Shown here in pieces: positions 11,044-34,900 of a stretch of 64,000 bases of DNA (positions within the stretch are counted from its first letter, which is position 1; each line of letters starts with the position of its first letter). Below the pieces are notes generated by a model. That model was not told where the DNA came from and ran no database searches. It was given only the letters and a program-made list of their open reading frames with translations. Made by a program: the position numbers and the translations under genes. The DNA is taken from IMG/VR virus record IMGVR_UViG_3300047095_000752, positions 181,226 to 245,225 of that record; one strand, written 5' to 3'.

Positions 11044-11388
11044 TTATACTTCTTTCGACTTATCCATACCATCAAGCTTTTCCTTTAAGTGGTTTAGAGT
11101 TTGACCTAAATCCTCAATATATTCTTCTAATAATTCTATTCTGTGTTCGTCTGATATTGCTTGTCGTTGATATTTTGCCATCTCTTCATAATAGTTTAGA
11201 TTTAATTCAGATGGGATATAGTAAGGTGGGTTAATTCTAGGCGCAGACACTAAACGATCATTTAAACGCTTTTGTTCTACCTGCTCAATATTCTCCAACA
11301 ACTTTATATCTTCAGCAGACAACAAATCATATATAGTTTTAGTATTTGGATCGTTATGATACATGAAAGTCCCTCGTCTGACTGCCAT
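11044..11388 (-). CDS. hypothetical coiled-coil protein
   Basis: 114-aa ORF, coupled. Confidence 0.5.
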   Translation of the reverse strand: MAVRRGTFMYHNDPNTKTIYDLLSAEDIKLLENIEQVEQKRLNDRLVSAPRINPPYYIPSELNLNYYEEMAKYQRQAISDEHRIELLEEYIEDLGQTLNHLKEKLDGMDKSKEV

Positions 11389-11957
11389 TATTTTTGTTTA
11401 TTAAGACGATCTTCACAGATGCACCGAATAGATTTAGTATTAGCCTCAACTTGATTTATAAGGTGAGTTGTGCTGTATTGATTATAAAAAGGTAAAAATA
11501 AAGGCGTTATGTTATATTCCTTAAAAATATTCTTTTCATTTTGCGTCATAGATTCGTAACTGTACTGATCTGATTTAATAAAATAATCTGGACGTATCGC
11601 CTTAAGAACACCATCAATAACAGGCGCATCGAAAATAGTCACATAATCAACATAAGAAAGACTAGCTAAAAAGAAGGCGCGGTCGTCTTGATTTAGGATA
11701 GGTCTACTCTCACCTTTTAGAATCTTAACTGATATATCTGAGTTCAACGCAATAATAACAGTATCAATAAAAGATCCATCAACTTCAAAGTATTTGGCTC
11801 GGGAGATCAGATCCAAGTGACCGGGATGCGTAAGATCGAAGCAACCACCGAGCATGGCTACCTTGTGATCCGGATTTGTATTTTTAAGATTCTTTAGTAT
11901 TTCATCTGGGGATTTAACTTTTTCGATAAGAATATCATTTTTAGTTTGATTGTACAT
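11388..11957 (-). CDS. RfaE/HldE domain II-like nucleotidyltransferase (ADP-heptose synthase / cytidylyltransferase family)
   Basis: GCFDLTHPGH (HxGH), ALNSDISVKILKGESRPI, VDYVTIFD, IRPDYFIK, YSTT. Confidence 0.88.
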   Translation of the reverse strand: MYNQTKNDILIEKVKSPDEILKNLKNTNPDHKVAMLGGCFDLTHPGHLDLISRAKYFEVDGSFIDTVIIALNSDISVKILKGESRPILNQDDRAFFLASLSYVDYVTIFDAPVIDGVLKAIRPDYFIKSDQYSYESMTQNEKNIFKEYNITPLFLPFYNQYSTTHLINQVEANTKSIRCICEDRLNKQK

Positions 11958-11962
11958 TTATA

Positions 11963-12484
11963 TTATCCTTTATAGTTCCATGATTTATTGTGTACTACAT
12001 CGTATATACACGTATCCGAAACATTGTACTTAGCCGCCAATTCTCTTAGGCTGTATTCTTTATTCGAATATTGATATCGAATTTCTTCAGCCTTTTCATA
12101 ATTTAATTTCCGCTTTTTATATCCAATTTGAGGAACCATAAGTCCAGTTTCATAAGCATGATTTATATTTTCTTTTTGTGTCACCCATTCTAGATTGTCG
12201 ACGTTATTATCAGTCTTTACACCATTAATGTGATTGACTTGAGCGCCCTCGAAATAAGTATCCGATTTAAATGCTCTAATAACAAGCTGATGCACACAAT
12301 ATGTTTTTGATTTTTTATCTTTAGTTAAATCTAATTTTTTATAGCCATATGTATTTAAATTAGGTTTTAGAATTGTGCCTAGACCTTTAGATCCAGTACC
12401 GGTATGAAAACTCTTTATATTACCTAAATTACTAACTTGATATTTATTATCAAAATCTTCTATAGCTACCCAAATCTCTTCCAT
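11963..12484 (-). CDS. NUMOD4-HNH homing endonuclease
   Basis: EEIWVAIEDF..YQVSNLGNIKS; VNHINGVKTDNNVDNLEW. Confidence 0.92.
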   Translation of the reverse strand: MEEIWVAIEDFDNKYQVSNLGNIKSFHTGTGSKGLGTILKPNLNTYGYKKLDLTKDKKSKTYCVHQLVIRAFKSDTYFEGAQVNHINGVKTDNNVDNLEWVTQKENINHAYETGLMVPQIGYKKRKLNYEKAEEIRYQYSNKEYSLRELAAKYNVSDTCIYDVVHNKSWNYKG

Positions 12485-12485
12485 A

Positions 12486-13433
12486 TTATCCTTTATTCTT
12501 CAGCCATTGATAGATCTTACCGGGAATGTATGTCGCAATATCGATGTGGTCCATTGGCGTTGGAGAACTTATATAATTTGAGATCTTAAATTGACCTTGA
12601 ACACCAAAACAATTTTCAGATCCATAGACTCGGTTACATAAATGTAGCGGACCCGACAAAACACCAACACAATACTTAGATTTTTTCACAACATCCAGAA
12701 GTAAATCGGGGTGCATAGGTTTATTACGGATTGAATACTTCTCATCGATAAAAGATGGTAGCGGAACTTTACTAAACACGATATTCGACGAACTGTTGAT
12801 ATGCACATCAAACGGCTGATATCCAGCATCTACGATTTCTTTCCAAATTGCGGCTTGAATATTTTCATTTGGGATCTTGATCGATTTGTCCGTATGCCCG
12901 GCGAAGTGATAAACAACTTGCTTGGAATCTTTGTTATCGAGATCGAAATTAAATGTATGAGTCTTTAATTTTACATTATCCCAACCAATTTCAACAAAAG
13001 CACACATTTCATTTTTAGATCTGTTTATGATTTGATCTGGTTTGGTTGATGGGTGTCTAAAATCGCAGTACCGGATATTGGCTATAATTTTATACTTCTT
13101 AGAAAGTTCTTTCATATTGTAACGGAAGAATACATTATCAACTCCCTGTACAATACTAGATCCGTACGGGATAACAAATTCTTTATTAAGGTCTGAAATT
13201 TTAATAATATCAGGGTGTAAATTTGTATAGTCGAGAGATGGGTGGTGACCAATGTTGAAAGTCCATTTTGGATATGCTTCTTTTAAAGTTACATATAGAT
13301 CCAGAAATTCAACAATGTCACCAATGCCGTGGTCAAAGATCAACAGGACTTTACCCGGACTGTATGTATCTAAGTAATGAACTAATTTATTTTTTGAGTT
13401 TGCAATTAAATTTTCTAATTGAATCGATTTCAT
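12486..13433 (-). CDS. GT9-like (heptosyltransferase-fold) glycosyltransferase
   Basis: HGIGDIV N-terminal motif; VGVLSGPLHL (cf. DSGPxH); next to HldE-like gene. Confidence 0.65.
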   Translation of the reverse strand: MKSIQLENLIANSKNKLVHYLDTYSPGKVLLIFDHGIGDIVEFLDLYVTLKEAYPKWTFNIGHHPSLDYTNLHPDIIKISDLNKEFVIPYGSSIVQGVDNVFFRYNMKELSKKYKIIANIRYCDFRHPSTKPDQIINRSKNEMCAFVEIGWDNVKLKTHTFNFDLDNKDSKQVVYHFAGHTDKSIKIPNENIQAAIWKEIVDAGYQPFDVHINSSSNIVFSKVPLPSFIDEKYSIRNKPMHPDLLLDVVKKSKYCVGVLSGPLHLCNRVYGSENCFGVQGQFKISNYISSPTPMDHIDIATYIPGKIYQWLKNKG

Positions 13434-13528
13434 GTTATACTCCTTGTATCTATATTATAATATAACCGACTAAATGTATACAAGAAAAAACTACCCGACT
13501 CAGATTAGAGCCGGGTAGTATATTTTGG

Positions 13529-14803
13529 TTATCCGAGAATCTCGCCGATGAGATCCTTGGATATTAACGAATCCATGATGGCTTCGTTAAGGTTCGACTG
13601 TACAGTCGGGTTGAGTACACCCGCCCGCTGCAGAAGCTTAGCCGCCGCCTCAATACAATGAATTCTGTCTACAAGGCTTCCGGATTCCTCACTGGACAGA
13701 ATCTGGTACACTCGGTCGGCGAGTGTATTTTCTTGTTTCGTGCGGGTGGTATGAGTCGGCGTTCTGAGAACCGGTTCTTGGGAAACCGACTCTACAACCG
13801 ACTTTGTCGTGGGCATCTCGGGAGCCGGGTGAGGAAATCCCTTTTCCTTGTTGATGATCTCGATTGCCCGTTGCACCCGCAGGGCATTGGTCTCATCATT
13901 TGGTGAGAACTTAATCTCACCACTCGTGAGACTCCTCGGGCTGATCGCAGCCACCTCTCTCATGTTGGTCAGCCACCGACCTTTACCCCGGTGAGCGATC
14001 CCCTTGTCGCAGCCACTTGTAAACGCCATGTAATTAATGGCAGCAACCGTGGCTGTCCCGATTGAACCAACCTTGATGGAATCTCCCACCTTCGCCGCCT
14101 TCAGCAATCTTACAGACTCATCCACAAGGCTGTCACAGACAACCTTGCGCTTCATACCGTGCCTCGCGGCGCGGCGTTCCTCTATCATAACCACGTTTTC
14201 TTCTCCCTTCACTTCACCCAATATCTTTGGTGTATCAGCTTCCGCTGCAACCATATCCGGTATTTCAATTTCAACCGGTTCAGCGCCAACAGCGATATCT
14301 TTAATCTCATGTCCCTCAACATCGACAAGCGAATGGGAGGGGGTTAATACCACATGGATTGGCTTCTCCACCTTTTCAAGTTCCGCAGCGGAATTACCAC
14401 TCCAGATGTCCTTGATGTACGTATTCGAAGACTCCCCACACTCCAGTTTCAATATCTTCACCGCCGCCGCCGCCCGTGAACTGTTCGTGTCCACAAACGG
14501 TGAAAACCTGATGCGGCGCTTCTCGATATTGGTTATATCGATTGCGATCAGGTCTGCCCGCGTCAGGGACTCGCCTTGACGGTGAGCTTTAATACCAACC
14601 GAGCCACCGAGGCAAAAAGCAGCCCAATTGATATTACACACCAACTGGAAGCTCTCCTTTGTCGCCATGTTGAATTTCACGGTCGACCCCGGTCCTTTAC
14701 CTCCAGATTTTAGTTCTTCAACAATCGCTATAACAGTAGCATCATCGAAGAACTTCGGTCTTGTAGGACCGATTGAAACGGTCCTCATCTTCATATCAAT
14801 CAT
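13529..14803 (-). CDS. GC-rich orphan protein with two internally similar domains
   Basis: GAAGGAG RBS; INWAAF..GG..GIKAHRQG..LT / INYMAF..G..KGIAHRGKG..LT and I(R/K)FSP repeats; own promoter motif and terminator. Confidence 0.7.
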   Translation of the reverse strand: MIDMKMRTVSIGPTRPKFFDDATVIAIVEELKSGGKGPGSTVKFNMATKESFQLVCNINWAAFCLGGSVGIKAHRQGESLTRADLIAIDITNIEKRRIRFSPFVDTNSSRAAAAVKILKLECGESSNTYIKDIWSGNSAAELEKVEKPIHVVLTPSHSLVDVEGHEIKDIAVGAEPVEIEIPDMVAAEADTPKILGEVKGEENVVMIEERRAARHGMKRKVVCDSLVDESVRLLKAAKVGDSIKVGSIGTATVAAINYMAFTSGCDKGIAHRGKGRWLTNMREVAAISPRSLTSGEIKFSPNDETNALRVQRAIEIINKEKGFPHPAPEMPTTKSVVESVSQEPVLRTPTHTTRTKQENTLADRVYQILSSEESGSLVDRIHCIEAAAKLLQRAGVLNPTVQSNLNEAIMDSLISKDLIGEILG

Positions 14804-14857
14804 ACCATCTTTCACTCCTTCCACGAGTTAGTTGAAAACCACAATTAAGTTTGGATT

Positions 14858-14877
14858 CAATAATTAATATATATAGT
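14858..14877 (-). promoter_or_regulatory. phage promoter class A (AYTATATATAT-N7-YG)
   Basis: ACTATATATAT TAATTAT TG upstream of the GC-rich gene. Confidence 0.7.
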
Positions 14878-15002
14878 CTATATTTATAAGGGAAATTTTT
14901 TGTCAAATCGATTGGATCTTTTAGCAAAAGAGTGGTACAATGATGGTATCTATACAAACCATATAGACGGTTGTATTGGCAAAGTTTAGAATTCAAATTT
15001 TA

Positions 15003-15015
15003 AGACAAATGATTA
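15003..15015 (+). promoter_or_regulatory. phage promoter class B variant (AGACAAAT)
   Basis: GACA-N6-TA upstream of nrdJ. Confidence 0.4.
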
Positions 15016-15045
15016 TCATACAAAAAACACAGGAGTTTAATTTTT

Positions 15046-17031
15046 ATGAGTCGTGACGAAATGAATGAATGGATCTTCCCAATTAAAGAACGCTTTAAAC
15101 TAAGTGAAAAGTTTCTAGAAGATTTCATAGATAAAGAACCGAATTGGGGTCCACTGGGTAAATTAACATACAAGAGAACATATGCTGCCCGTGTAGAGGG
15201 CGAAGATCGCACCGAAGAATGGTTTGAAACCGTAAAGCGAGTCGTAGAGACATGTTACACGATTCAATTAAATCATTGTAAAAATTTAAGACTCCCTTGG
15301 AAAGCACATACAGCACAAAAGTCCGCCCAAGAAATGTATACTCGGATGTTTACTTTTAAGTTTATTCCTCCGGGGCGCGGACTTGCTAATATGGGTGATG
15401 TTATTTTTAAACGTGGATCTATGGGGTTATTCAATTGCTCTGCGGTATCCACTAACAGCACAAATTTCTCAGATCCATACGTTTTCATGATGGACGTTTC
15501 AATGTGTGGAGTGGGATGTGGATTTGATACAGAAGGATCCGGTAAATTCAAATTCGTAACACCAAAAACAACAGATAAGCCACATATAGTGGAAGACTCT
15601 CGTGAAGGGTGGTGTGAGATCCTCCGAGTTGTTCTTGAATCATATGTTGGTAAAGAACACTTACCTACTAATATTGATTATTCTCAGATCCGAAAGATTG
15701 GATCTCCTATCGTAACATCTGGCGGCACTGCTCCCGGTCCAGAACCTTTAATTAATTGTATAAATAAAATTCAAGAAATAATGAATAAACGAATTGACTA
15801 TGATATTTCATCTAGTGATATTGTTGATCTTATGAATATTATTGGAGTGTGTGTTGTAGCTGGCGGGAAAAGGCGCACAGCCCAGATAGCCTTTGGACAT
15901 TACAACGATCAAGAATATATTTCATTGAAGGATCCGGATCTGCACCAAGAAGAATTAATGACCCACCGTTGGGCGTCAAATAATAGCATCTATGCTCAAG
16001 ATGGAATGGATTACACCAATATTATTAATACAATTAAAAAGTCTGGCGAACCCGGAATTCTTTATAAACATCGTATGCAAAATTATGGTCGTTTGAAAGA
16101 TGGGTATCAAGAAGGCATTGATGGTAAGGCTACACTGCTTAATCCATGCGGTGAAATTTCGCTGGAGAGTGAAGAACTCTGCAATATAGCGGATGTCTTC
16201 CCGGCGCACCATAGTTCCTTCGAAGATTTTAAACGTAGTCTCAAATTTGCATTTCTATATTGCAAGTCGGTCACGCTCGTACCTACACATTTAACCACAA
16301 CAAATTCGAAAATCCTAAAGAACCGCAGAATTGGAATCTCTCAGTCTGGGATCGTGCAAGCAATCCAAAAGCACGGTACAACCGAATACTTCCGTTGGTG
16401 CGATGAAGGATATCAATACCTCAAAAACTTGGATAAAAAATATTCAGACTGGCTATGTATCCAGAAAAGCATTAAGATTAGCACGGTTAAGCCGAGCGGA
16501 ACGACATCACTTCTGTGTGGGTCTACGCCGGGGATTCATTTTGAACACTCCGAATATTATATCCGTCGAATTCGGATTGAAGAAACCAACGAACAATTGA
16601 TTCAATCGGTTAAAGATGCTGGCTATAAGTGGGAAGTATCCGCTTATGGTGATCGTTCCATAGTATTTGAAATACCCGTCAAGGCTGAGAACTTCTATAA
16701 AGGGAAGTCGGACGTTTCGGTTTGGGAACAAATGCAACTTGGATCTAAGATTCAATCAATTTGGGCGGATAATAGCGTTTCACAGACAGTGCACTTTACC
16801 AAAGACGAATCCCTCTATCTTAAAAATGTAATTGAAATGTACGAAGATCAGTTGAAGACCGTATCATTTCTACCCCTGTCGGATCACGGATATATACAAG
16901 CACCGTATGAGTCAATAACCAAGGATCAGTACGAAGAAATGAGCAAGAATATAATCGCAATAAACTTTAAGTTTAAGAATACACAAGACACCATCGAGAA
17001 ATTCTGTGATGGTGATAAGTGTATGATCTAA
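15046..17031 (+). CDS. nrdJ: class II (adenosylcobalamin-dependent) ribonucleotide reductase, monomeric RTPR type
   Basis: TYKRTY, PPGRGL, FNC, NPCGEI, RRIG, VKPSGT, C-terminal CDGDKC. Confidence 0.93.
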   Translation: MSRDEMNEWIFPIKERFKLSEKFLEDFIDKEPNWGPLGKLTYKRTYAARVEGEDRTEEWFETVKRVVETCYTIQLNHCKNLRLPWKAHTAQKSAQEMYTRMFTFKFIPPGRGLANMGDVIFKRGSMGLFNCSAVSTNSTNFSDPYVFMMDVSMCGVGCGFDTEGSGKFKFVTPKTTDKPHIVEDSREGWCEILRVVLESYVGKEHLPTNIDYSQIRKIGSPIVTSGGTAPGPEPLINCINKIQEIMNKRIDYDISSSDIVDLMNIIGVCVVAGGKRRTAQIAFGHYNDQEYISLKDPDLHQEELMTHRWASNNSIYAQDGMDYTNIINTIKKSGEPGILYKHRMQNYGRLKDGYQEGIDGKATLLNPCGEISLESEELCNIADVFPAHHSSFEDFKRSLKFAFLYCKSVTLVPTHLTTTNSKILKNRRIGISQSGIVQAIQKHGTTEYFRWCDEGYQYLKNLDKKYSDWLCIQKSIKISTVKPSGTTSLLCGSTPGIHFEHSEYYIRRIRIEETNEQLIQSVKDAGYKWEVSAYGDRSIVFEIPVKAENFYKGKSDVSVWEQMQLGSKIQSIWADNSVSQTVHFTKDESLYLKNVIEMYEDQLKTVSFLPLSDHGYIQAPYESITKDQYEEMSKNIIAINFKFKNTQDTIEKFCDGDKCMI

Positions 17032-17762
17032 CAAGAGTTAAACGAAATCCTTCGAAAGGGTTTAAAATGATATCAGATATTAACAACTGTCCAGAAGTTT
17101 ATTACCCAGAAAAAAATATATTTACGGGTATAATTGAAAATATATTTAATCAAATTGGAACCACCAATAAATATTACGTCGAATTTGGATTTACTGATGT
17201 TGATGAACTATATGATAATACAACATTTCTAAAAAGGCATCATGGTTGGAATGGCTTGTGGATGGATGTAAGTCCGAATACAAAGTATAATAAAAAGAAA
17301 AATCCAGCCGTAAAAATCCATAAAATAACTGCAGAAAATATTAATGATTTATTTGAGTTATATAATGTTCCTGAAATATTCGATTTGCTAATCATTGATG
17401 TTGATTTTAATGACTTATGGATTTGGAAAGCATTAAATGAAAAATATAAACCAAGAATGTTAATGATCGAATACAATTTATTCGTACCACCCGGAGAAAG
17501 TAAAGTTGTTGCGTACGACCCCGACTTTGTTATAACTACGTATGACCAATATTTTGGCGGAAGTTTTGACGCATTATTAAAATTATCAAAAGAAAAAAAT
17601 TATCAATTAATTGGATGTTCGGATGCAAATATGTTATTCGTACCAAATGATTTAGTGGATGGTAACTTTATAATACCAGATGACATATATACTTTATATA
17701 TCCCACCAAATCCAAATAAACACACACACCCAAAATCAAATATGACCATGATAGACTACTAA
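17019..17762 (+). CDS. FkbM-like SAM-dependent methyltransferase
   Basis: YYVEFG, GWNGLWMD, ITAENIN, FDLLIIDVDFNDLWIW, PRMLMIEYN. Confidence 0.8.
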   Translation: MYDLTRVKRNPSKGFKMISDINNCPEVYYPEKNIFTGIIENIFNQIGTTNKYYVEFGFTDVDELYDNTTFLKRHHGWNGLWMDVSPNTKYNKKKNPAVKIHKITAENINDLFELYNVPEIFDLLIIDVDFNDLWIWKALNEKYKPRMLMIEYNLFVPPGESKVVAYDPDFVITTYDQYFGGSFDALLKLSKEKNYQLIGCSDANMLFVPNDLVDGNFIIPDDIYTLYIPPNPNKHTHPKSNMTMIDY

Positions 17763-17775
17763 AAATCAATAAAAC

Positions 17776-17812
17776 GAACGCCAGACCATATAAATTGGTT
17801 TGGCGTTCTTTT
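17776..17812 (+). terminator. intrinsic terminator
   Basis: GAACGCCAGACCA/TGGTTTGGCGTTC followed by T-run. Confidence 0.7.
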
Positions 17813-24172: not shown

Positions 24173-24218
24173 AAAAAACACGCTACCGGGATATCTGCCG
24201 GTAGCGTGTTCTTTTTTA
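24173..24218. terminator. bidirectional intrinsic terminator
   Basis: AACACGCTACCGG/CCGGTAGCGTGTT flanked by A- and T-runs. Confidence 0.8.
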
Positions 24219-24222
24219 GTTC

Positions 24223-24633
24223 TTATGCTTTCTTTCCTTTCTGGATTGCTTCGAGGACAATCCCGGTTGAAAGGACCGCGAACAATATCACGGTCTGCAC
24301 CATAGCCGCCCCAGCCACTGCAGTTAGGCAGTAGGGGGATTCGTTCAACTTGTAGGACATGGCGATGATCGCCAGTCCCGCTACGACGAGGGAAATAACC
24401 GCCCGGAGGCGGATGTGATTTTCCCACATGTAGCGCGTCCGCTCATGTGGCTCCGACCACCTCTGATTGATAATCAGTACCCAAAGCGCCGCTGTTGTTC
24501 CGGCGACACATGATACCACCGGGATGCTGATGTTGTTGAGTGGTGCGAAATACGCCGCCCCGTAGATTGCAGCCTCTCCAATGATAGCAGCGATTAGCAT
24601 AAAAGGCATTAAAGCCTTCCGATCTTCAAACAC
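24223..24633 (-). CDS. GC-rich multi-pass membrane protein
   Basis: about four hydrophobic helices; GAAGGAG RBS. Confidence 0.7.
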   Translation of the reverse strand: MFEDRKALMPFMLIAAIIGEAAIYGAAYFAPLNNISIPVVSCVAGTTAALWVLIINQRWSEPHERTRYMWENHIRLRAVISLVVAGLAIIAMSYKLNESPYCLTAVAGAAMVQTVILFAVLSTGIVLEAIQKGKKA

Positions 24634-24663
24634 GATTTTACTCTCCTTCCAAGAGGTATTATA

Positions 24664-24981
24664 CTATTTCCCGAACATCGCCCCCATCATCCGACCCGCC
24701 GTCGCCAATCCCATCACCGTATTTTTAATCTCCTCTATTTTGGGTCTAAGACCCGATGCCTTGAAGCGGAGCGCGTCAACAATGACGCCCACCACAATCA
24801 AGGTAACAACGCCACATATCAGATAGGTCGGGGCGGCGAGCGCCTTCATAGCACCCACCGCGAGGAAGCCCACCATGTAGGCTTCCTTGTTCCCCCCGGT
24901 CTGGATTCCTTTCCAGACCGGGGTAACGAATGCTCGGGTGAGGGACCCAATCCTTTTGAGTCCCTTTACGATGGGGTTCAT
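24664..24981 (-). CDS. GC-rich membrane protein
   Basis: ATG 24981 in ATGA overlap with the upstream gene; hydrophobic core. Confidence 0.65.
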   Translation of the reverse strand: MNPIVKGLKRIGSLTRAFVTPVWKGIQTGGNKEAYMVGFLAVGAMKALAAPTYLICGVVTLIVVGVIVDALRFKASGLRPKIEEIKNTVMGLATAGRMMGAMFGK

Positions 24982-25316
24982 GTGCAAGCCCCAACCCGTG
25001 CACCCACGGACTGGGCGAGGTACCATGCCGCGTAGACGGCGATGGCGGGGATGAACCACAAGAGGCTACACCCCGTCACCACGAGGTCTAGAATCTGACC
25101 GGCCTTGTGGTCTACGGTCCCCTTCCTCTCAATCGCGAGCATGATACCCATGCTCACGAAACTTCCCGTGATCGCCACAGCGGCAATCGTGGGGAAGATG
25201 GTGCCGACAGCACACCAACCAATAAGGCTGATGGCGTCGGCGGTGACTGGCGACCTCTCAAGGAAGTCAAGACACTTCCCGATGGTCACCTGAAGGTGAA
25301 GTTTGAGTTTACCCAT
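24978..25316 (-). CDS. GC-rich membrane protein
   Basis: AAAGGA RBS; hydrophobic helices. Confidence 0.65.
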   Translation of the reverse strand: MGKLKLHLQVTIGKCLDFLERSPVTADAISLIGWCAVGTIFPTIAAVAITGSFVSMGIMLAIERKGTVDHKAGQILDLVVTGCSLLWFIPAIAVYAAWYLAQSVGARVGACT

Positions 25317-25349
25317 AATATATCCTTTCTTGGAGATGTTTTTGTTCAG

Positions 25350-25796
25350 TTATACCGCCACACAACCGACGCGGGCGGGACGCTCACCCATAAAGCTATT
25401 ATTACGGATGGTGGATAAAATCTTCTCACCGATAATGTAAGTGGCGAGGGCGGTGATGACACGGAGTGTAAAACCGAGTAGCACACCCACCACCATAAGC
25501 TGCAACCCAACCAACCAGATGGTCAGTTTGCCTAGCACCGCATAACCGGCGAAGCGGGCAATACCCCCTTCGATGACGACCGTCAGTATCGTCTTCAACG
25601 AGGGCTTAGAGACGAGCTCAATCGCGGAGCATACAAGCACCACACCACCAATGGCGGTGAGAGCGACTGGGGCGGCGACGAGACCCATCGCCATCCCACC
25701 TACACCCACAACAACGGACGCCACAGGGGCGAACTTCACGCCGAAGTTGAGGGCGCGGACGATGATATTCTTGACATTGGATACGATGCTTTTCAT
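25350..25796 (-). CDS. GC-rich membrane protein
   Basis: first gene after class A promoter; very hydrophobic. Confidence 0.7.
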   Translation of the reverse strand: MKSIVSNVKNIIVRALNFGVKFAPVASVVVGVGGMAMGLVAAPVALTAIGGVVLVCSAIELVSKPSLKTILTVVIEGGIARFAGYAVLGKLTIWLVGLQLMVVGVLLGFTLRVITALATYIIGEKILSTIRNNSFMGERPARVGCVAV

Positions 25797-25869
25797 GGTA
25801 TTACCCTTTGATGTTTAGACTATATGAAACCACCATTCAATCCGCATAGATCGATGATAGTATTCTTTA

Positions 25870-28134: not shown

Positions 28135-28154
28135 TGGATCGGATCCAAACATGA

Positions 28155-28190
28155 AACAAAAAATAAAGCCTGTATATAAACAGGCTTAAA
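28155..28190 (-). terminator. intrinsic terminator
   Basis: AAGCCTGT/ACAGGCTT followed by T-run on the minus strand. Confidence 0.7.
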
Positions 28191-28239
28191 ATTTATGGGT
28201 GTTAATTTACCTCACTTTAAGTTAAAGTTGAACTATATA

Positions 28240-28259
28240 CAATATTTAATATATATAAT
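28240..28259 (-). promoter_or_regulatory. phage promoter class A (no downstream ORF)
   Basis: ATTATATATAT TAAATAT TG. Confidence 0.65.
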
Positions 28260-28702: not shown

Positions 28703-28717
28703 AACTTAATCCTTTCA

Positions 28718-29017
28718 ATGTTGGAGGTATTCATGCTAAAATTTGTCATAAATATATCTAAACTAATTATAACATTAATTGTATGTGGATTCACGTATAA
28801 TTTGTTAGTTGACAGTTATAATAGAGTTACTAAAAAAGAAAATGTTATATATAACATATCAGTGTATTACGATCTATCTCTGGCCGATTCAGACTCCTCG
28901 TACAAGATGCCAATCATAAAGGATAATTATATACAATACACAAATATAAACGGAGACACTTTAATATACAGTAACTTTAGATATAAGATTGAAGTTAAGG
29001 AATTGGACAGCAAATAA
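28718..29017 (+). CDS. small membrane-anchored protein
   Basis: N-terminal hydrophobic helix. Confidence 0.5.
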   Translation: MLEVFMLKFVINISKLIITLIVCGFTYNLLVDSYNRVTKKENVIYNISVYYDLSLADSDSSYKMPIIKDNYIQYTNINGDTLIYSNFRYKIEVKELDSK

Positions 29018-29028
29018 GAATAGAATTG

Positions 29029-29036
29029 GGACAAAT
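29029..29036 (+). promoter_or_regulatory. phage promoter class B
   Basis: GGACAAAT upstream of 29073. Confidence 0.55.
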
Positions 29037-29072
29037 TTAAGTAAATTTAACTTTTAATGAAGGATTTTATAA

Positions 29073-29945: not shown

Positions 29946-30038
29946 TTATCTTATTAAAATATATATAATACACAATCCCATTTCAATTAATATTGGAATG
30001 GGATTCTTTTTATGATATCATATGGGTAGGAGAACACT

Positions 30039-30557
30039 ATGAATAGTAAAAATAAAGGATCATCGTTCGAGCGCAAGATTTGTAAGTTATTATCACAGTG
30101 GATTACAAGCGGTGAACGTGACGATATTTTGTGGCGCTCCATTTCATCTGGAGCTTGGAATACTATTAAAAAACGCACTACAAATACACAAATTGGGGAT
30201 CTTACCTATATAGATCCATTAGGGAAACCTTTTATTGATAAGTTTGCAATCGAATGTAAATCGTATAAAGATGTACAAATGATTAAATTGTTTAACGAAA
30301 ATAGTATTATAAATAAATGGTGGGATAAAATTAATGAAGAAGCCGGAGATAAATATCCAATTATAATATTCAAAGAAAATAGAAGTTGTGAGTTTGTGGT
30401 TATTCCGTATTCTATATTTGACGTATTGAATTCTGACATTGGATTTTCAAATACAAATTATATTAAAGTGGGTAGGGAAACTAATACATTTTATATAATT
30501 AAACTGTCGGATTTATTACAAAATGATTACAATAAATTTATAAATGACATAAGATAA
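30039..30557 (+). CDS. Holliday junction resolvase (Hjc-like PD-(D/E)XK)
   Basis: SKNKGSSFER...SSGA...GDL...IECK. Confidence 0.85.
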   Translation: MNSKNKGSSFERKICKLLSQWITSGERDDILWRSISSGAWNTIKKRTTNTQIGDLTYIDPLGKPFIDKFAIECKSYKDVQMIKLFNENSIINKWWDKINEEAGDKYPIIIFKENRSCEFVVIPYSIFDVLNSDIGFSNTNYIKVGRETNTFYIIKLSDLLQNDYNKFINDIR

Positions 30558-30569
30558 AGGATGATAACA

Positions 30570-30719
30570 ATGCGTAAATTTAATGAAGATTTTTCATCAC
30601 CCATGAGTTCAGTTAGTATGCCTTCATATGAGACATTTACTAAACCTTATCGCTTAGATAAAGCAAAAAAATTTATTAAAAAAATTGCTGCTAAAAAAAT
30701 AAACTCTACTAAAAAATAA
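30570..30719 (+). CDS. 49-aa basic protein (MRKFNEDF...KKINSTKK)
   Basis: AAAGGA RBS, followed by terminator. Confidence 0.5.
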   Translation: MRKFNEDFSSPMSSVSMPSYETFTKPYRLDKAKKFIKKIAAKKINSTKK

Positions 30720-30760
30720 CCCCCCAGTAGCGTCGTGTCAGCGCGGACTGGGGGATTTAA
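30711..30760. terminator. bidirectional terminator
   Basis: CCCCCAGT/ACTGGGGG stem with A/T flanks. Confidence 0.65.
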
Positions 30761-30954
30761 AATTTTATTCGGGTGGAGTTTAGGGACCAGCCCTTATAGC
30801 TATGTTCATTTTAATTACCCAATCATGGTGAAGCCCTAGCTGTGGTTGGCGCGGGCGTGGGAAACTTGTTCAACCACCTCGTCGACGGTGGCGTTCGGAT
30901 AGCGGACTACGACTTGCCAGATCGCTCTAACAAGTGTAGTCCGCTCAACTGGAC

Positions 30955-31239
30955 TTAGCGGGCGCACGCGGGGCACCCACCGAGCCTCGCCCGCAGCCGG
31001 GCGAACCGGCTGGGGGGCGGAAGCACAGGGGCTTTCTTCAGCCCCAGCTTCAGAGCGGCTGCCCCGACAATCGCCGGGTTCCTCAACACCATGGCACCGC
31101 CAATGGCGGCCACCATGATTACGCCCGCGACCGCGTAATCCCGCTTCGTAAGCGGGGTGTCGGTCGTCTTGGTTGTGGTCGTCTCTTCGGTAGTGGTGAT
31201 CTTTTCGTGGGTCTCTGCGTTATTGGTGTCTTGTTCCAT
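30955..31239 (-). CDS. GC-rich small membrane protein
   Basis: GGAAGG RBS; Thr-rich N-terminus, one TM helix, basic Cys tail. Confidence 0.65.
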   Translation of the reverse strand: MEQDTNNAETHEKITTTEETTTTKTTDTPLTKRDYAVAGVIMVAAIGGAMVLRNPAIVGAAALKLGLKKAPVLPPPSRFARLRARLGGCPACAR

Positions 31240-31295
31240 GACATACCTTCCATTATGCCACCTATTCTTAGAATTAGGGGCGTTAGTTGTAAATT

Positions 31296-31315
31296 CAATA
31301 GTTTATATATATAGT
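31296..31315 (-). promoter_or_regulatory. phage promoter class A
   Basis: ACTATATATAT AAACTAT TG. Confidence 0.7.
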
Positions 31316-31401
31316 CGTTTTTAGCCTATTTTGAAGGTAAAATATAAGCTGTTTTCTTACACAATTTTAGGGTATAATACCGCACATAATCATATTTTTT
31401 A

Positions 31402-31414
31402 GGACAAATGAGTG
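31402..31414 (+). promoter_or_regulatory. phage promoter class B
   Basis: GGACAAATGAGTG upstream of the LigD-PE/GT operon. Confidence 0.55.
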
Positions 31415-31484
31415 TAAAGAGGTTAAAATAAACAAGAAGATTTTATAAAATGGTTTAATTTAAAAATATTAAAGGAGAATAACT

Positions 31485-31910
31485 TTGTATTCGACTGAAC
31501 GATTTGTGATCCATGAACACGACGCTAAAACAGCAGGTTTACACTATGACCTGCGGATCTCTATCCCAAACCGAGATTCCCTAGCGAGTTTTGCGATCCC
31601 TAAGCATAAGATCCCACAAAAAGCAGGGGATAAGGTTTTGGCTGTAAAGACGCACGACCATGGTAGAATCTGGCTGTCCATAGATAATATGACGATCCCA
31701 GAAGGTCAGTACGGAGCAGGATCTATAAATATTTTTCAGGCAGGTGTATGTGAGATAGAAGGTTGGTCGTATAGTCACATAACATTTAGAGTAAATGGAT
31801 CCTCAGTAAAAGAAGGTCTGGATGGAAGATATGCTTTAATTAAGTTTAGAGGTGGTAAATCTGGAGACAGAGATAACCTATGGGTATTATTAAAAACTAA
31901 AACACAATAA
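31485..31910 (+). CDS. stand-alone LigD 3'-phosphoesterase (PE) domain protein
   Basis: RFVIHEHDA...LHYDLR...SFAIPK...LAVKTHDH...IPEGQYGAG. Confidence 0.9.
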   Translation: MYSTERFVIHEHDAKTAGLHYDLRISIPNRDSLASFAIPKHKIPQKAGDKVLAVKTHDHGRIWLSIDNMTIPEGQYGAGSINIFQAGVCEIEGWSYSHITFRVNGSSVKEGLDGRYALIKFRGGKSGDRDNLWVLLKTKTQ

Positions 31911-31944
31911 TAAATAAAATGCACAGCACACAAGGAATAATACA

Positions 31945-33111
31945 ATGAAATTGTTAGAACAACAAATATATAAGCAGTTACATGAACATAACGAGATCTG
32001 CTTTGGCCCCTTGGTGGGGGAACTGGGGTGGGAAGTAATTCTTTTATCTGGATTTATTAAAAAGTATAAGAAAGATTACCCCGAAAAGAAGATCTACGTT
32101 TGTACCAGAACAGATCGAAAAGAACTATATGAAAACTGTGGACTAGACGATATTCTAATTTTTGATATTCCGGGTGATTACGATAAATTTACTGCGCGTG
32201 GTAACACATTATGTATCGAGAATGCTGAAGGTATTCCGCTTATCGTAGATGTATCAAAACAATTTAAAAATTTAAAAGAGAGTGTCCACCAAATCCATCC
32301 CGGAACTGTATTTTTTTCATTCGAAACTCAGCAATTTAGTGCTGTCCCGCCTTATGAACTGTCCAATCTAGACTTTAGATTGCTACCAAATCCCGCCAAT
32401 AGTGATGTCATTAAAAATATACTATCCAAGAAAGAAAATCTTAATAAGAAGGTTGTCACTATATTTAGTAGGCACCGTATAGATCTAGCTCACAGAAATT
32501 GGAGTGAATCTAACTGGAAAAGTTTATTCAGAAAATTAAAGAAAAATGATGATTACATAGTCTTCATCTCTGGCATATCCCCTTCGTTCGTGAAGCCTAA
32601 AGCCTCTAAAAACATATATATACTGGAGGATATTCAGAAGAATTATAACGCAGATGTAACCACACTAGGATTATGTATAGAAGCTATACGTAATTCTACT
32701 TTTACGTTCGGTCCACAGACAAGTGGGATCCTCTTAGCAAATATATTAAATGTTCCATCATTATATTTTGGTAAAGAAAGAGATCTTGTATCAAAAAACT
32801 ATAATCCATTTAACGTCCCCCATCAATTCGTAGAAGTGGAATATGGATCTAATTTCTCGTATAATATAGCAGTGGATGAGGTATATAACTACATTTTAAA
32901 TTTTAATCCAAATTCTGATACCAATATAAATTCGGCTCCAAGCACATTAGCAGAAAATATGGAATATAAACTTCCTGTCTTACACCCAACATTATCTCAA
33001 ATCACAGATCCAAAAGTATTACGTGAAAAGGTTAGAGAATTTAATATGTATGGAGTTCGTAGAAATATTCCATTAGAGTTAAGACCAGTTAATACACATT
33101 CCGAGGGATAA
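31945..33111 (+). CDS. GT9-like glycosyltransferase
   Basis: GPLVGELGWE; RNW..NW; FGPQTSG; GT-B layout. Confidence 0.65.
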   Translation: MKLLEQQIYKQLHEHNEICFGPLVGELGWEVILLSGFIKKYKKDYPEKKIYVCTRTDRKELYENCGLDDILIFDIPGDYDKFTARGNTLCIENAEGIPLIVDVSKQFKNLKESVHQIHPGTVFFSFETQQFSAVPPYELSNLDFRLLPNPANSDVIKNILSKKENLNKKVVTIFSRHRIDLAHRNWSESNWKSLFRKLKKNDDYIVFISGISPSFVKPKASKNIYILEDIQKNYNADVTTLGLCIEAIRNSTFTFGPQTSGILLANILNVPSLYFGKERDLVSKNYNPFNVPHQFVEVEYGSNFSYNIAVDEVYNYILNFNPNSDTNINSAPSTLAENMEYKLPVLHPTLSQITDPKVLREKVREFNMYGVRRNIPLELRPVNTHSEG

Positions 33112-33116
33112 TATAA

Positions 33117-34286
33117 ATGAAAAATACTGAGAAAAAGATATACGAAGAATTAGAACCCCATAATACAATTTGTTTTGGTCCTGTTTTCTCCGATTTTGGA
33201 TGGGAGGTGTCATACATCTCAGGGTTTATCAAAAAGTATAAAAAAGATAATCCACACAAAATAGTATTTGTAGCAACTCGTGAAAACCGTAAAGAATTAT
33301 ATGAAAATGCAGGACTTAATGATGTCTTCACATTTAAAATCGACGGTGATTATGCGACAGTAACACCGAGATCTCACTCAGTATATAAAGTTGATTCAAA
33401 AAATGTAAATGTACCAATTCCAATAAAAGTTGAAGATGAGTTTAAATATGTAAAAGATAGAATTTCAGATACCCATAAAAATGTAAAATTCCATTCATTT
33501 GTAGATTTAGTTTTTAGTTTTCAACCGGACTTCTCACTACAGGAATTTGATTATAGTTTTAAAACCCATGATGACAATTCAAAATTAATTCAAGATATCA
33601 TTGAAAAGAATCCAAATAAAAAAGTAGTAACAATATTCAGCAGACAGAGAGTAGACCTAGACCACAGAAATCTAGGAGTTAATCATTGGAATCATTTATT
33701 AAGACGACTCAGTGATTTAGATTCGCATATATTCTTAATCGCAGGAGTAAGTCCAGCGTATGTAAAACCAGACCCTCACTATAAGAATATGTATAACCTT
33801 GAAGATATGTGTGGCGATAATCCAAATGTTACAATACTAGCATTAATGATTGAGGCTGTCCGGAGATCACATTTTACATTCGGACCTCAAACTGCAGGTA
33901 TATTATTATCAATGGTTATGCAAGTTCCTACATTATATTTTGGTACGGACTATAACCTCGTATCAATAAATTATAATCCATTTAAATCTCAATCTGATTT
34001 TATACAAGTTAAAGTTAAGCACCCATCTGGAGAATATGATATAAATCCGGATGAACTTTACCGTAGAATAACAGAACTTAAATTAAGAGATCCTAATCAG
34101 ATAATAGTTACACCCGGACCACACACAATTGATATTGAATATCGAATACCAGAACTACATCCTTTATTAGTAGGTTTAACGGGATATCAAAAAATACAAA
34201 AAATAAGAGAATTAAATAGAAATCCTTCTAAATCAATACCCCTCATCGAACCGGTACCCGCTGTTGATACCGTAATTACAAAATAG
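33117..34286 (+). CDS. GT9-like glycosyltransferase, tandem paralogue
   Basis: colinear similarity to 31945..33111 (ICFGP..GWE, RKELYEN.GL, KKVVTIFSR, FTFGPQT.GILL, NYNPF). Confidence 0.65.
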   Translation: MKNTEKKIYEELEPHNTICFGPVFSDFGWEVSYISGFIKKYKKDNPHKIVFVATRENRKELYENAGLNDVFTFKIDGDYATVTPRSHSVYKVDSKNVNVPIPIKVEDEFKYVKDRISDTHKNVKFHSFVDLVFSFQPDFSLQEFDYSFKTHDDNSKLIQDIIEKNPNKKVVTIFSRQRVDLDHRNLGVNHWNHLLRRLSDLDSHIFLIAGVSPAYVKPDPHYKNMYNLEDMCGDNPNVTILALMIEAVRRSHFTFGPQTAGILLSMVMQVPTLYFGTDYNLVSINYNPFKSQSDFIQVKVKHPSGEYDINPDELYRRITELKLRDPNQIIVTPGPHTIDIEYRIPELHPLLVGLTGYQKIQKIRELNRNPSKSIPLIEPVPAVDTVITK

Positions 34287-34297
34287 GAATATGAACA

Positions 34298-34900
34298 ATG
34301 AAGATATACAATCAAAAAAAAGATTTATGGTTAATGGCGTGGGCGGATTGGAATCCCGCTAAACGATATACAGAAGAATATCAAGTGAGAGCCGAGACTA
34401 CAAATTATTATAAACCCGAAGTTTTACAAATTAGAGATAGCTTTGTTAGATCTAAATGTGATCTTAAAACTGCGTTTGATTACGGGTGCGGTATGCGACC
34501 TTTCCATCTTAATCTCAAAACGAAAGAATCCGACTGTCTCGGTATGTGGGATAAATATATTGAACCTCACACAAAGTTCGACCGTGAAGCATATATGAAA
34601 AGTATAACTCTGCTGTTGTTTGATGTATTGGAGCATATGCACGATCCACATGCATTTTTAATGACGATCCCACAAAAACGATTGATAATGACAATTCCTG
34701 TATTTCCTGCAGCAACGATTAATACTTTAGAGGAGCTTGAAGGTTGGAAGCATACCCGTCCCGGTGAACATTTCATCTACGCTACAGAAGCTGGTATAAT
34801 TGATATAGTTACCGAGTCTGGATGGAATATAGAATACAAAGGATATCCAGAGTGCCCTCCCCGTGAAGATATTTTAACATTGGTTTTAACAAGGAATTAA
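34298..34900 (+). CDS. class I SAM-dependent methyltransferase
   Basis: FDYGCG, FDVLEHM.DP, WKHTRPGEH. Confidence 0.8.
   Translation: MKIYNQKKDLWLMAWADWNPAKRYTEEYQVRAETTNYYKPEVLQIRDSFVRSKCDLKTAFDYGCGMRPFHLNLKTKESDCLGMWDKYIEPHTKFDREAYMKSITLLLFDVLEHMHDPHAFLMTIPQKRLIMTIPVFPAATINTLEELEGWKHTRPGEHFIYATEAGIIDIVTESGWNIEYKGYPECPPREDILTLVLTRN

What the first reader, a model, noticed from the sequence alone, without database searches (positions are those of the whole stretch)
11388..34900. Dispersed heptose/glycan-modification kit: HldE-like NTase, three GT9-like transferases, two methyltransferases
Seen: an HldE domain II-like gene and a GT9-like gene separated only by an HNH (11388-13433); an FkbM-like MTase (17019); and two tandem GT9-like paralogues plus a SAM MTase (31945-34900) downstream of a class B promoter. 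The tandem pair shares an extra C-terminal motif EY(K/R)(L/I)PxLHP...K(V/I)RE(F/L)N...IPL. Established: GT9 enzymes use ADP-heptose, and related enzymes heptosylate proteins. Inference: the phage makes an activated sugar and decorates either its own Ser/Thr-rich virion proteins (39123, 61172), the PEP-CTERM protein or host LPS.
Basis: partly seen in the sequence, partly recalled or inferred. Interest (0 to 1): 0.7.

Follow-up and report, generated by a model that had tools for sequence, protein, structure and literature searches.

The report
Phage sugar-transferase genes, target unknown
A large uncultured lake-water phage carries a sugar-activating enzyme and several heptosyltransferase-like sugar transferases, so it probably decorates some molecule with sugars, but which sugar and which target remain unknown.

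Summary

- **NTase:** P0004 (11388-11957) is an HldC/HldE-domain-II-like nucleotidyltransferase.
- **P0001 (12486-13433):** a divergent GT9-superfamily GT-B enzyme. It has no direct Pfam hit, but it is GT9-like by fold and linked through intermediate sequences, and the catalytic Asp is kept.
- **GT-NTase pair:** in relatives P0001 and the NTase are directly adjacent, so the HNH gene between them here is an insertion.
- **P0002/P0003 (31945-34286):** 43%-identical paralogues from a large phage family without any Pfam domain. They are GT9-like by fold only.
- **Glycan islands:** in distant relatives the P0002-family gene lies inside 10-15-gene glycan islands.
- **Methyltransferases:** P0006 is a plausible SAM methyltransferase. 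The FkbM call for P0005 is weak and synteny does not link it to the other genes.
- **Fourth transferase:** another GT9 gene, with four conserved Cys, lies outside the window.

The record lacks gmhA, gmhB and a heptose kinase, so at most the last activation step is phage-encoded. P0001 also lacks the heptose-contacting Asp. No DNA-hypermodification partner was found. Sugar and target are untested.

Verdict: a plausible phage glycosylation kit and a new variant of a known kind, of moderate interest.

The parts
11388..11957 (-). P0004, 189 aa: HldC / HldE-domain-II-like sugar-phosphate nucleotidyltransferase with its HxGH motif intact
   Evidence: Family matches: PF01467 6.7e-13, phrog_7878 5.7e-21, and TIGR02199 1.8e-31 at 108.9 bits, below the 181.5 equivalog cut-off. 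Best solved relative is PDB 5x9q at 5e-17, with the HPGH, RPI and STT motifs aligned. Homologues of 75% and 66% identity sit directly after the P0001 homologue in L005 and L007.
11963..12484 (-). Free-standing NUMOD4 + HNH homing endonuclease inserted between the GT and the NTase. It is not part of the glycan function.
   Evidence: Pfam NUMOD4 1.1e-13 and HNH_3 1.6e-10; phrog_59 4.2e-47. It is absent from the GT|NTase junction of relatives. The sequence AAAGGATAAT flanks it on both sides here and occurs once at that junction in L005.
12486..13433 (-). P0001, 315 aa: divergent GT9-superfamily GT-B glycosyltransferase, the conserved partner of the NTase
   Evidence: No direct Pfam, NCBIfam or PHROG hit. 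AF2 model: pLDDT 77, pTM 0.80. Foldseek finds WaaC at 3e-6, and VIA Z to GT9 chains is 13.6-15.4 against 9.3 or less for others. The profile search gave 154 relatives, and 14 of 103 single-domain ones carry PF01075. The family HMM aligns WaaF and WaaC in motif register. D39, equivalent to WaaC Asp13, is present in 103 of 106 sequences. Leu259 stands at the WaaC Asp261 position.
17019..17762 (+). P0005, 247 aa (likely start 17067): putative FkbM-type methyltransferase. The assignment is weak and membership of the kit is doubtful.
   Evidence: No Pfam, NCBIfam or PDB match. Atlas feature search scores 0.96 to viral clusters in which 27-28% of members carry PF05050. The equivalent slot between RNR and Dam in L005 and L007 holds an unrelated gene.
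31945..33111 (+). P0002, 388 aa: GT-B transferase with a GT9-like fold from a large phage family without Pfam assignment, plus a C-terminal tail of about 60-70 aa
   Evidence: AF2 model: pLDDT 82, pTM 0.81, with the tail at pLDDT below 50. Foldseek finds 3tov at 3e-8. VIA Z: 3tov 19.4, WaaF 16.9, WaaC 16.4, TibC 14.6, other GT-B 12.7 or less. AFDB neighbours are mostly named GT9. The family has at least 212 members, none with a Pfam domain. Conserved residues in about 120 of 122 sequences: E26, W29, E30, R55, R58, D78, K168, R176, R178, R184-N185-W186 and Q258. hhalign against the GT9-like profile gives only 6-29% probability.
33117..34286 (+). P0003, 389 aa: tandem paralogue of P0002 with the same tail motif
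   Evidence: 43% identity to P0002, E 6e-102. The close relative L014 has the same tandem pair, while L010 has a single copy.
34298..34900 (+). P0006, 200 aa: probable class I SAM-dependent methyltransferase (Methyltransf_23-like)
   Evidence: phrog_6564 'methyltransferase' 7.9e-7. PF13489 E 0.007, below its cut-off. Atlas 0.96 to viral clusters that are 86-100% Methyltransf_23. A 53%-identical gene follows the single GT in L010. A Methyltransf_23 gene also lies in the glycan island of L015.

Best explanation
These genes are the reduced, scattered remnant of a glycan-building toolkit carried by a lineage of freshwater jumbo phages.

**Shown**
- P0004 is an intact HldC-type nucleotidyltransferase.
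- P0001 is a GT9-superfamily GT-B enzyme with the catalytic Asp.
- P0001 and P0004 form a conserved adjacent gene pair that a homing HNH has split in this phage.
- P0002 and P0003 are paralogous GT-B enzymes with a GT9-like fold and a strongly conserved polar residue set.
- In distant relatives their family lies inside multi-enzyme glycan islands.

**Inferred**
- P0001 transfers that sugar to an acceptor.
- P0002, P0003 and the 467-aa four-Cys GT9 outside the window add further residues.
- P0006 O-methylates the glycan.
- The acceptor is most likely a protein, either a phage virion or other phage protein. A host-envelope acceptor is the close second.
For: - **NTase family:**
- **P0001 fold:** a clear Z gap between GT9 and other GT-B families.
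- **P0001 sequence link:** 14 of 103 single-domain relatives carry PF01075, and the family HMM aligns WaaF and WaaC in motif register.
- **Catalytic residue:** the Asp13 equivalent is present in 103 of 106 family members. Residue roles come from bioRxiv 10.1101/2021.06.16.448588.
- **Gene pair:** GT-NTase adjacency with a 4-nt spacer in relatives at 76% and 47% identity.
- **P0002/P0003:** fold, paralogy and conserved residues.
- **Glycan islands with P0002-family genes:** they also hold Pfam GT9, GT4, a GT-D-like gene, a sulfotransferase, Methyltransf_23, epimerases/dehydratases, hexapeptide acyltransferases and PIG-L.
- **Recurring GT-MTase link:** adjacency in L010 and GT9-like/methyltransferase fusions in relatives.
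- **Lead toward a protein acceptor:** the 467-aa GT9 has an N-terminal extension and four conserved Cys placed like the TibC iron finger (PMC4358343).
- **Precedent:** HldE-like NTases next to sugar genes in T4-like cyanophages.
Against: - No activity, donor or acceptor has been measured.
- The NTase scores below the HldE-domain-II equivalog cut-off.
- P0001 has Leu at the heptose-contacting Asp261 position, and that column varies across its family.
- P0002 and P0003 have no significant sequence link to GT9.
- No match to SIS_2 (GmhA fold), GmhB or a PfkB kinase in the record.
- The GT genes lie among replication and nucleotide-metabolism genes, not structural genes. Another P0001-family member sits beside an NT5C nucleotidase.
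- The two loci may serve different pathways.
- The TibC resemblance of the 467-aa protein was not confirmed by sequence, and the protein was not folded.
- The host is unknown.
Confidence: 0.4

Rival explanations
1. Host-envelope remodelling. The transferases act at the cytoplasmic face of the inner membrane on the LPS core, or on another lipid-linked glycan, of a Gram-negative host. This would change the cell surface during infection, for example to block superinfection or to stop progeny adsorbing to debris.
For: The closest structures are the LPS core heptosyltransferases WaaC and WaaF. HldE-like NTases in cyanophages lie beside sugar kinase, epimerase and carbamoyltransferase genes. The phage carries a PEP-CTERM protein; by general knowledge this points to a Gram-negative, exosortase-bearing host. 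Early or middle gene placement suits host takeover.
Against: No flippase, ligase or lipid-carrier gene was seen. P0001 lacks the heptose-contacting Asp. A lytic jumbo phage would gain little from altering newly made LPS only. The relatives' islands with sulfotransferase and acyltransferases look like autonomous glycan synthesis rather than a core edit.
Confidence: 0.25
2. Not one kit. The P0001-NTase pair and the P0002/P0003(-P0006) block belong to separate pathways with different donors and acceptors. P0005 is unrelated to either.
For: The two loci are 18 kb apart on opposite strands. The P0001 and P0002 families show no significant mutual similarity. Only the pairings P0001-P0004 and GT-P0006 recur in relatives. 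P0005 is not conserved in its slot. The NTase did not appear among the called genes of the large glycan islands examined.
Against: In the islands of distant relatives, GT9-type and P0002-type genes lie side by side. That suggests the families cooperate.
Confidence: 0.3
3. DNA or nucleotide glycosylation. The GT-B enzymes put sugars on phage DNA bases, as T4 alpha- and beta-glucosyltransferases do, to evade restriction.
For: All four GT genes are embedded among DNA-metabolism genes: class II RNR, Dam, 5'-3' exonuclease, PDDEXK nuclease, LigD phosphoesterase, family B polymerase and clamp loader. A P0001-family member lies next to an NT5C nucleotidase and an intein-bearing RecA-like gene. By general knowledge, T4 DNA glucosyltransferases are early genes.
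Against: The record has no ThyA-type hydroxymethylase, no TET/JBP dioxygenase and no C5-cytosine methylase. ThyX is present, which implies ordinary dTMP synthesis. The nearest structures are GT9 enzymes. The relatives' islands with sulfotransferase, acyltransferases and epimerases are not typical of DNA glycosylation. The record is only 78% complete, so absence is not proof.
Confidence: 0.12
4. Catalytically dead GT-B folds used as structural or binding proteins, like the GT9-like chains that appear in plant NDH-PSI supercomplex structures.
For: Chains of NDH-PSI supercomplexes are among the structural matches.
Against: The catalytic Asp is conserved in 103 of 106 P0001-family members, together with phosphate-loop motifs. 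The P0002 family keeps about 20 polar residues in about 120 of 122 sequences. The pairing with an NTase and the island contexts argue for enzymes.
Confidence: 0.03

Closest known systems
E. coli LPS core heptosyltransferases WaaC (HepI) and WaaF (HepII), CAZy GT9 / Pfam PF01075
   Same: Both have a two-Rossmann GT-B fold, and these are the best structural matches for P0001 and P0002. P0001 keeps the G-D catalytic-base loop (D39 = Asp13), a Thr/Lys loop aligned by eye with the pyrophosphate-binding segment, and the (S/T)-G-x-x-H motif.
   Different: There is no direct PF01075 match. P0001 has Leu for the heptose-contacting Asp261. The P0002 family replaces the G-D loop with G-E-x-x-W-E and has its own R-x-R...R-N-W and G-x-Q-S motifs. 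P0002 and P0003 carry an extra conserved C-terminal tail. All are phage-encoded, and their acceptor is unknown.
TibC/AAH bacterial autotransporter heptosyltransferases (BAHT; PDB 4rap, 4rb4; PMC4358343)
   Same: GT9-like catalytic core, with Z 14.5-14.9 to P0001 and P0002. The phage's 467-aa GT9 outside the window shares the outline: an N-terminal extension, a GT core and four conserved Cys after the C-lobe GP motif.
   Different: By inspection P0001, P0002 and P0003 have no four-Cys cluster and no beta-barrel-length extension. The 467-aa protein finds WaaF, not TibC, by sequence and was not folded. No autotransporter-like acceptor was identified.
HldC (chain 5x9q; from memory Burkholderia pseudomallei) and domain II of HldE (TIGR02199): heptose-1-phosphate adenylyltransferase
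   Same: It is the best family and the best solved relative of P0004. The HxGH, RPI and C-terminal S-T-T motifs are aligned.
   Different: The score of 108.9 bits is below the 181.5 equivalog cut-off. P0004 is a stand-alone protein of a phage that lacks the rest of the pathway. Its substrate has not been tested.
HldE-like nucleotidyltransferase genes of T4-like cyanophages (S-CAM1, S-CAM3, S-SSM7, P-TIM68, S-T4)
   Same: A phage-borne HldE-domain-II-like NTase (28-34% identity to P0004) next to carbohydrate genes. All are annotated but not characterised.
   Different: The neighbours differ: carbamoyltransferase, kinase and epimerase there, a GT9-like transferase here. The phage lineage and habitat also differ.
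Mycobacteriophage virion glycosylation (Freeman et al. 2023, as cited in PMC12619734) and glycosyltransferase-rich aquatic jumbo phages (PMC12619734)
   Same: Phage-encoded glycosyltransferases, which in mycobacteriophages put glycans on capsid and tail-tube subunits. Jumbo phages with several core GT families.
   Different: Here the GT genes lie among replication genes. The enzyme families differ. No glycosylated virion protein has been shown.

Membership tests
GT9 (Pfam PF01075 / CAZy GT9) | Significant direct match to the PF01075 profile | tested here: not met
   P0001, P0002 and P0003 have no Pfam hit even at E up to 10. The 467-aa protein outside the window does match (2.7e-6, 27.3 bits against a 22-bit cut-off).
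GT9 (Pfam PF01075 / CAZy GT9) | GT-B fold closest to solved GT9 enzymes, standing above other GT-B families | tested here: met
   P0001: GT9 chains Z 13.6-15.4, next family 9.3. P0002: GT9 chains Z 14.5-19.4, next family 12.7. P0003 is inferred from 43% identity to P0002.
GT9 (Pfam PF01075 / CAZy GT9) | Sequence homology through intermediates (profile link) | tested here: inconclusive
   P0001 meets this. 14 of 103 single-domain relatives carry PF01075 (best 2e-13). The family HMM hits WaaF at 28.7 bits and the 467-aa GT9 at 35.5 bits, in motif register. P0002 and P0003 do not. hhalign probability is 6-29%, there is no PDB profile hit, and none of the 120 listed of at least 212 relatives has a Pfam domain.
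GT9 (Pfam PF01075 / CAZy GT9) | Catalytic-base Asp in the N-terminal G-D loop (WaaC Asp13) | tested here: met
   P0001 has D39 in H-G-x-G-D, present in 103 of 106 family members. The P0002 family instead has G-E26-x-x-W29-E30, conserved in 121-122 of 122 sequences. Its equivalence to Asp13 is suggested only by a weak hhalign alignment.
GT9 (Pfam PF01075 / CAZy GT9) | Heptose-contacting Asp261 and His266 of WaaC (bioRxiv 10.1101/2021.06.16.448588) | tested here: not met
   P0001 has Leu259 at the Asp261 position. In its family that column reads D 29, N 14, A 13, S 10, L 9 and others. The His266 equivalent, H264, is present. P0002 could not be aligned reliably.
GT9 (Pfam PF01075 / CAZy GT9) | Uses ADP-heptose as donor | not testable with these tools
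   This needs enzyme assays.
HldE domain II / HldC heptose-1-phosphate adenylyltransferase (TIGR02199) | Score above the curated equivalog cut-off | tested here: not met
   108.9 bits against a cut-off of 181.5.
HldE domain II / HldC heptose-1-phosphate adenylyltransferase (TIGR02199) | Best-matching family within the cytidylyltransferase-like superfamily, with an intact HxGH motif | tested here: met
   TIGR02199 scores 1.8e-31, against 1.3e-3 for glycerol-3-phosphate cytidylyltransferase and 2e-5 for pantetheine-phosphate adenylyltransferase. THPGH aligns with HRGH of 5x9q.
Complete ADP-heptose pathway (GmhA, HldA/HldE kinase, GmhB, HldC) | The other three enzymes are encoded by the phage | tested here: not met
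   SIS_2, PfkB and TIGR00213 find nothing in the 245-kb record. The record is 78% complete.
BAHT protein heptosyltransferases (TibC/AAH) | N-terminal beta-barrel, four-Cys iron finger in the C-lobe, dodecamer | tested here: inconclusive
   By inspection of the translations and alignments, P0001, P0002 and P0003 have no conserved four-Cys cluster. The 467-aa GT9 has an extension of about 125 aa and four conserved Cys. phmmer finds WaaF, not TibC.
Class I SAM methyltransferase (P0006) | Profile match and SAM-binding motif I | tested here: inconclusive
   Methyltransf_23 scores 16.5 bits, below its 27-bit cut-off. phrog_6564 scores 7.9e-7. A D-Y-G-C-G motif is present. Atlas 0.96. No PDB sequence hit.
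FkbM methyltransferase (PF05050; P0005) | Profile match to Methyltransf_21 | tested here: not met
   No Pfam, NCBIfam or PDB hit. Only an Atlas feature resemblance to clusters in which 27-28% of members carry PF05050.
Phage DNA glycosylation systems (T4 alpha/beta-GT type; TET-coupled type) | A partner enzyme that creates the hydroxymethyl acceptor base | tested here: not met
   No Thymidylat_synt, Tet_JBP or C5 DNA methylase in the record. ThyX is present.

The most novel reading that the evidence does not exclude
This jumbo-phage lineage runs its own protein glycosylation system. An HldC-type enzyme supplies ADP-heptose. A TibC-like four-Cys GT9 and two previously unrecognised GT-B families (the P0001 type and the P0002 type) build a methylated, heptose-containing glycan on virion proteins. 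That would be protein heptosylation outside the autotransporter systems in which it was defined (PMC4358343). I know of no report of heptosylated phage virions.
Probability: 0.15. Interest if true: 0.75.

Novelty: new variant of a known kind. Interest (0 to 1): 0.45.

Why it matters
Phage-encoded glycosylation is known for DNA, for host O-antigen and, recently, for mycobacteriophage virions. The enzymes behind it in uncultured aquatic jumbo phages are largely unannotated.

This work gives a fold-level and partly sequence-level assignment to two families that no profile library recognises. One has about 150 cluster representatives and the other at least 212 members.

It also shows a conserved pairing of a transferase with a sugar-activating enzyme. 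And it ties the families to large glycan islands in related phages.

If the products decorate virions or the host surface, they would bear on adsorption, on recognition by predators or defence systems, and on carbon flow in lakes. The families also offer candidate new glycosyltransferase specificities.

Tried and rejected
- **Direct family scans.** Pfam, NCBIfam and PHROGs found nothing for P0001, P0002 or P0003.
- **Profile searches of PDB sequences.** A1 and A2 gave only chance hits such as eIF1 and IL-18.
- **Phage genome collection.** tblastn found no homologue of P0001 or P0002 in 50,697 records, and megablast found none either.
- **P0001 family against P0002 family.** BLASTP and hhalign were not significant: probability 8%, 29% and 6-7%. 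So 'three GT9 paralogues' is wrong at the sequence level; they are two unrelated-looking families sharing one fold.
- **The first '23 of 141 carry GT9' count.** It partly reflected tandem GT modules in long proteins. I repeated it on single-domain members only, giving 14 of 103.
- **Rest of the heptose pathway and DNA-modification partners.** Searches of the phage record were all negative.
- **Relatives' island genes.** GT4, GT-D-like, sulfotransferase and epimerase genes have no homologue in this genome.
- **Ser/Thr richness of the proposed targets.** Only mildly raised, so not informative.
- **P0005 as part of a conserved module.** Rejected, because the slot holds an unrelated gene in relatives.
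- **Promoter claim.** Sigma-70-type sites are at chance level.
- **RNA genes.** No Rfam family and no tRNA in the window.
- **Host.** Only the habitat could be read: lake water.
- **Complex prediction.** Not used, because no binding claim is made.

Full report
**Setting.** The window is the last 64 kb of a 245,225-bp IMG/VR virus record, estimated 78% complete. It is a jumbo phage with about 30-40% GC. Near-identical sequence is found in many lake-water metagenomes. Its portal is only 22-23% identical to that of any cultured phage, and the finding's genes have no DNA match in 50,697 phage records.

**The nucleotidyltransferase.**
- P0004 (11388-11957, minus strand) matches CTP_transf_like (6.7e-13) and phrog_7878 (5.7e-21).
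- Among NCBIfam models it matches HldE domain II far better than any other cytidylyltransferase-type family. TIGR02199 scores 1.8e-31, against 1.3e-3 for glycerol-3-phosphate cytidylyltransferase.
- Its score of 108.9 bits is below the equivalog cut-off of 181.5, so heptose-1-phosphate specificity is likely but not established.
- The best solved relative is chain 5x9q (5e-17), with the HxGH, RPI and C-terminal STT motifs aligned.
- Similar stand-alone genes (28-34% identity) are already annotated in T4-like cyanophages next to carbohydrate kinase, epimerase and carbamoyltransferase genes. A phage HldC-like gene is therefore not new in itself.

**P0001.**
- The 315-aa protein at 12486-13433 has no hit in Pfam, NCBIfam or PHROGs.
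- An AlphaFold2 model built on 8 homologues has pLDDT 77 and pTM 0.80. It is a GT-B fold whose best matches are all GT9 enzymes: WaaF Z 15.4, TibC 14.9, 3tov 14.5, WaaC 14.5. The next family scores 9.3.
- An exhaustive profile search found 154 cluster representatives.
- In a first Pfam scan, 23 of 141 carried PF01075. Some long relatives have separate tandem GT modules, so I repeated the scan on single-domain members only. There, 14 of 103 carry PF01075, best 2e-13.
- A local HMM of those members aligns E. coli WaaF (28.7 bits) and WaaC in motif register. H-G-L-G-D matches WaaC S-S-M-G-D13, and G-V-x-S-G-P-x-H matches V-D261-T-G-L-S-H266.
- According to bioRxiv 10.1101/2021.06.16.448588, Asp13 is the strictly conserved catalytic base, and Lys192, Asp261 and His266 contact the heptose hydroxyls.
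- In the P0001 family the Asp13 equivalent is present in 103 of 106 sequences. The Asp261 position is variable, and P0001 has Leu there.
- P0001 is therefore a divergent, probably active GT9-superfamily enzyme whose donor sugar need not be heptose.

**The GT-NTase pair.**
- In relatives at 76% identity (L005, L006) and 47% identity (L007-L009), the P0001 homologue is followed after 4 nt by the NTase homologue, beside a class II RNR.
- In this phage a NUMOD4/HNH endonuclease lies exactly between them. The sequence AAAGGATAAT stands on both sides of it and occurs once at the junction in L005.
- The HNH is therefore an insertion into a conserved two-gene unit. This adjacency is the strongest evidence that the two enzymes work together.

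**The tandem pair.**
- P0002 and P0003 are 43% identical.
- The P0002 model (pLDDT 82, pTM 0.81) is a GT-B fold. It scores Z 19.4 to the GT9 structure 3tov, 16.9 to WaaF, 16.4 to WaaC and 14.6 to TibC, and 12.7 or less to other GT-B families. Its AlphaFold DB neighbours are mostly named GT9.
- At the sequence level the link fails. There is no Pfam hit, no PDB profile hit, and hhalign probabilities against the P0001/GT9 profile are only 6-29%.
- The family has at least 212 members of about 305 aa, and none of the 120 listed has a Pfam domain.
- About 20 polar residues are kept in about 120 of 122 sequences, including G-E26-x-x-W29-E30, R55, R58, D78, K168, R176-x-R178, R184-N185-W186 and Q258. 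This pattern fits an enzyme.
It is confined to the 9 nearest relatives and is predicted with low confidence. Its role is unknown.

**Context of the tandem-pair family.**
- In near relatives the order is LigD phosphoesterase, then one or two GT copies, then PhoH/PIN. L010 has a 53%-identical P0006 homologue right after the GT.
- In distant relatives that share the Volactin marker (L015 on a 304-kb contig, L016, L017), the gene lies inside a glycan island. The island holds a Pfam-positive GT9 of 424-434 aa, GT4, a GT-D-like gene, a sulfotransferase, Methyltransf_23, epimerases/dehydratases, hexapeptide acyltransferases, PIG-L and Glyco_trans_1_2.
- This phage keeps only the GT9 (467 aa, at G000:C1:161138-162541, outside the window) and the P0002/P0003 pair.
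- The kit here is thus a reduced and scattered version of a larger ancestral or lineage-wide toolkit.

**The fourth transferase.** The 467-aa GT9 has canonical G-L-G-D and I-D-S-S...H motifs, an N-terminal extension of about 125 aa, and four Cys conserved at 25% identity after the GP motif. The layout recalls TibC, which has an N-terminal beta-barrel and a four-Cys iron finger inserted in the C-lobe (PMC4358343). It is a lead toward protein glycosylation, not a result.

**The methyltransferases.**
- P0006 has weak but consistent support and recurs next to the GT.
- GT9-like domains fused to methyltransferase domains occur in relatives and in AFDB clusters.
- P0005 rests only on a language-model resemblance. 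The equivalent slot in relatives holds an unrelated gene. I do not count it as part of the kit.

**What is missing.**
- The record has no match to SIS_2 (the GmhA fold), GmhB or a PfkB kinase. Any heptose-1-phosphate must come from the host.
- It has no ThyA-type hydroxymethylase, TET/JBP dioxygenase or C5-methylase, while ThyX is present. This argues against DNA glycosylation.
- Even so, all four GT genes lie among replication and nucleotide-metabolism genes, and another P0001-family member sits beside an NT5C nucleotidase. I keep the DNA rival at about 0.12.

**Targets.** Nothing here identifies the acceptor. The 866-aa and 942-aa proteins have 21-22% Ser+Thr against a 12.8% background. The PEP-CTERM protein is genuine, with a signal peptide and a VPEP...RRK end. 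By general knowledge that motif suggests a Gram-negative, exosortase-bearing host.

**Verdict.** I rate this a new variant of a known kind: phage-encoded glycosylation genes. Interest is moderate.

Noticed in passing
window 24200-25850: A sharply bounded GC-rich island (50-60% GC against 25-33% in the flanks). It encodes four small, very hydrophobic Ala/Gly/Val-rich membrane-protein ORFs on the minus strand. It has no Rfam match and no tandem repeats.
   Followed up: partly
window 35400-37751: The PhoH/PIN gene is 783 aa here but 409-412 aa in relatives, and it aligns to them in two blocks. The extra middle part hits PHROGs annotated as terminase, primase and helicase. It is probably an intein or a similar insertion.
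   Followed up: partly
window 42757-47101: A homologue of Volactin, the archaeal actin-like protein (Pfam 3.7e-52), is followed by an HNH endonuclease and then a GH9 cellulase-like protein with a CelD_N domain. In relative L010 Volactin is directly followed by the GH9 gene, so this HNH also looks inserted.
   Followed up: partly
window 9111-9917 (+): A secreted PEP-CTERM protein with a signal peptide and a VPEP...RRK C-terminus, on the opposite strand to its neighbours. By general knowledge it hints at a Gram-negative host with an exosortase.
   Followed up: partly
G000:C1:161138-162541 (-), about 19 kb upstream of the window (L018:9138-10541): A fourth transferase: a 467-aa Pfam-positive GT9 with an N-terminal extension and four conserved Cys after the C-lobe GP motif. 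The layout recalls the TibC iron finger.
   Followed up: partly
G000:C1:153625-159206 (L018:1625-7206): The family B DNA polymerase is split into a 780-aa and a 258-aa ORF, with CapR-domain/HNH-like genes between them. Paralogues of those inserted genes occur at several places in the genome.
   Followed up: no
window 11963-12484 and 34903-35415: Two NUMOD4/HNH endonucleases, 44% identical to each other. Each sits at the edge of one of the glycan-gene blocks. The first is flanked by AAAGGATAAT on both sides.
   Followed up: yes
L020:6001-7490 and L021:3865-5471: More distant P0001-family genes lie next to an NT5C nucleotidase and an intein-bearing RecA-like gene in one phage. In another contig they lie among genes with faint GT10 and MGAT2 hits.
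   Followed up: no
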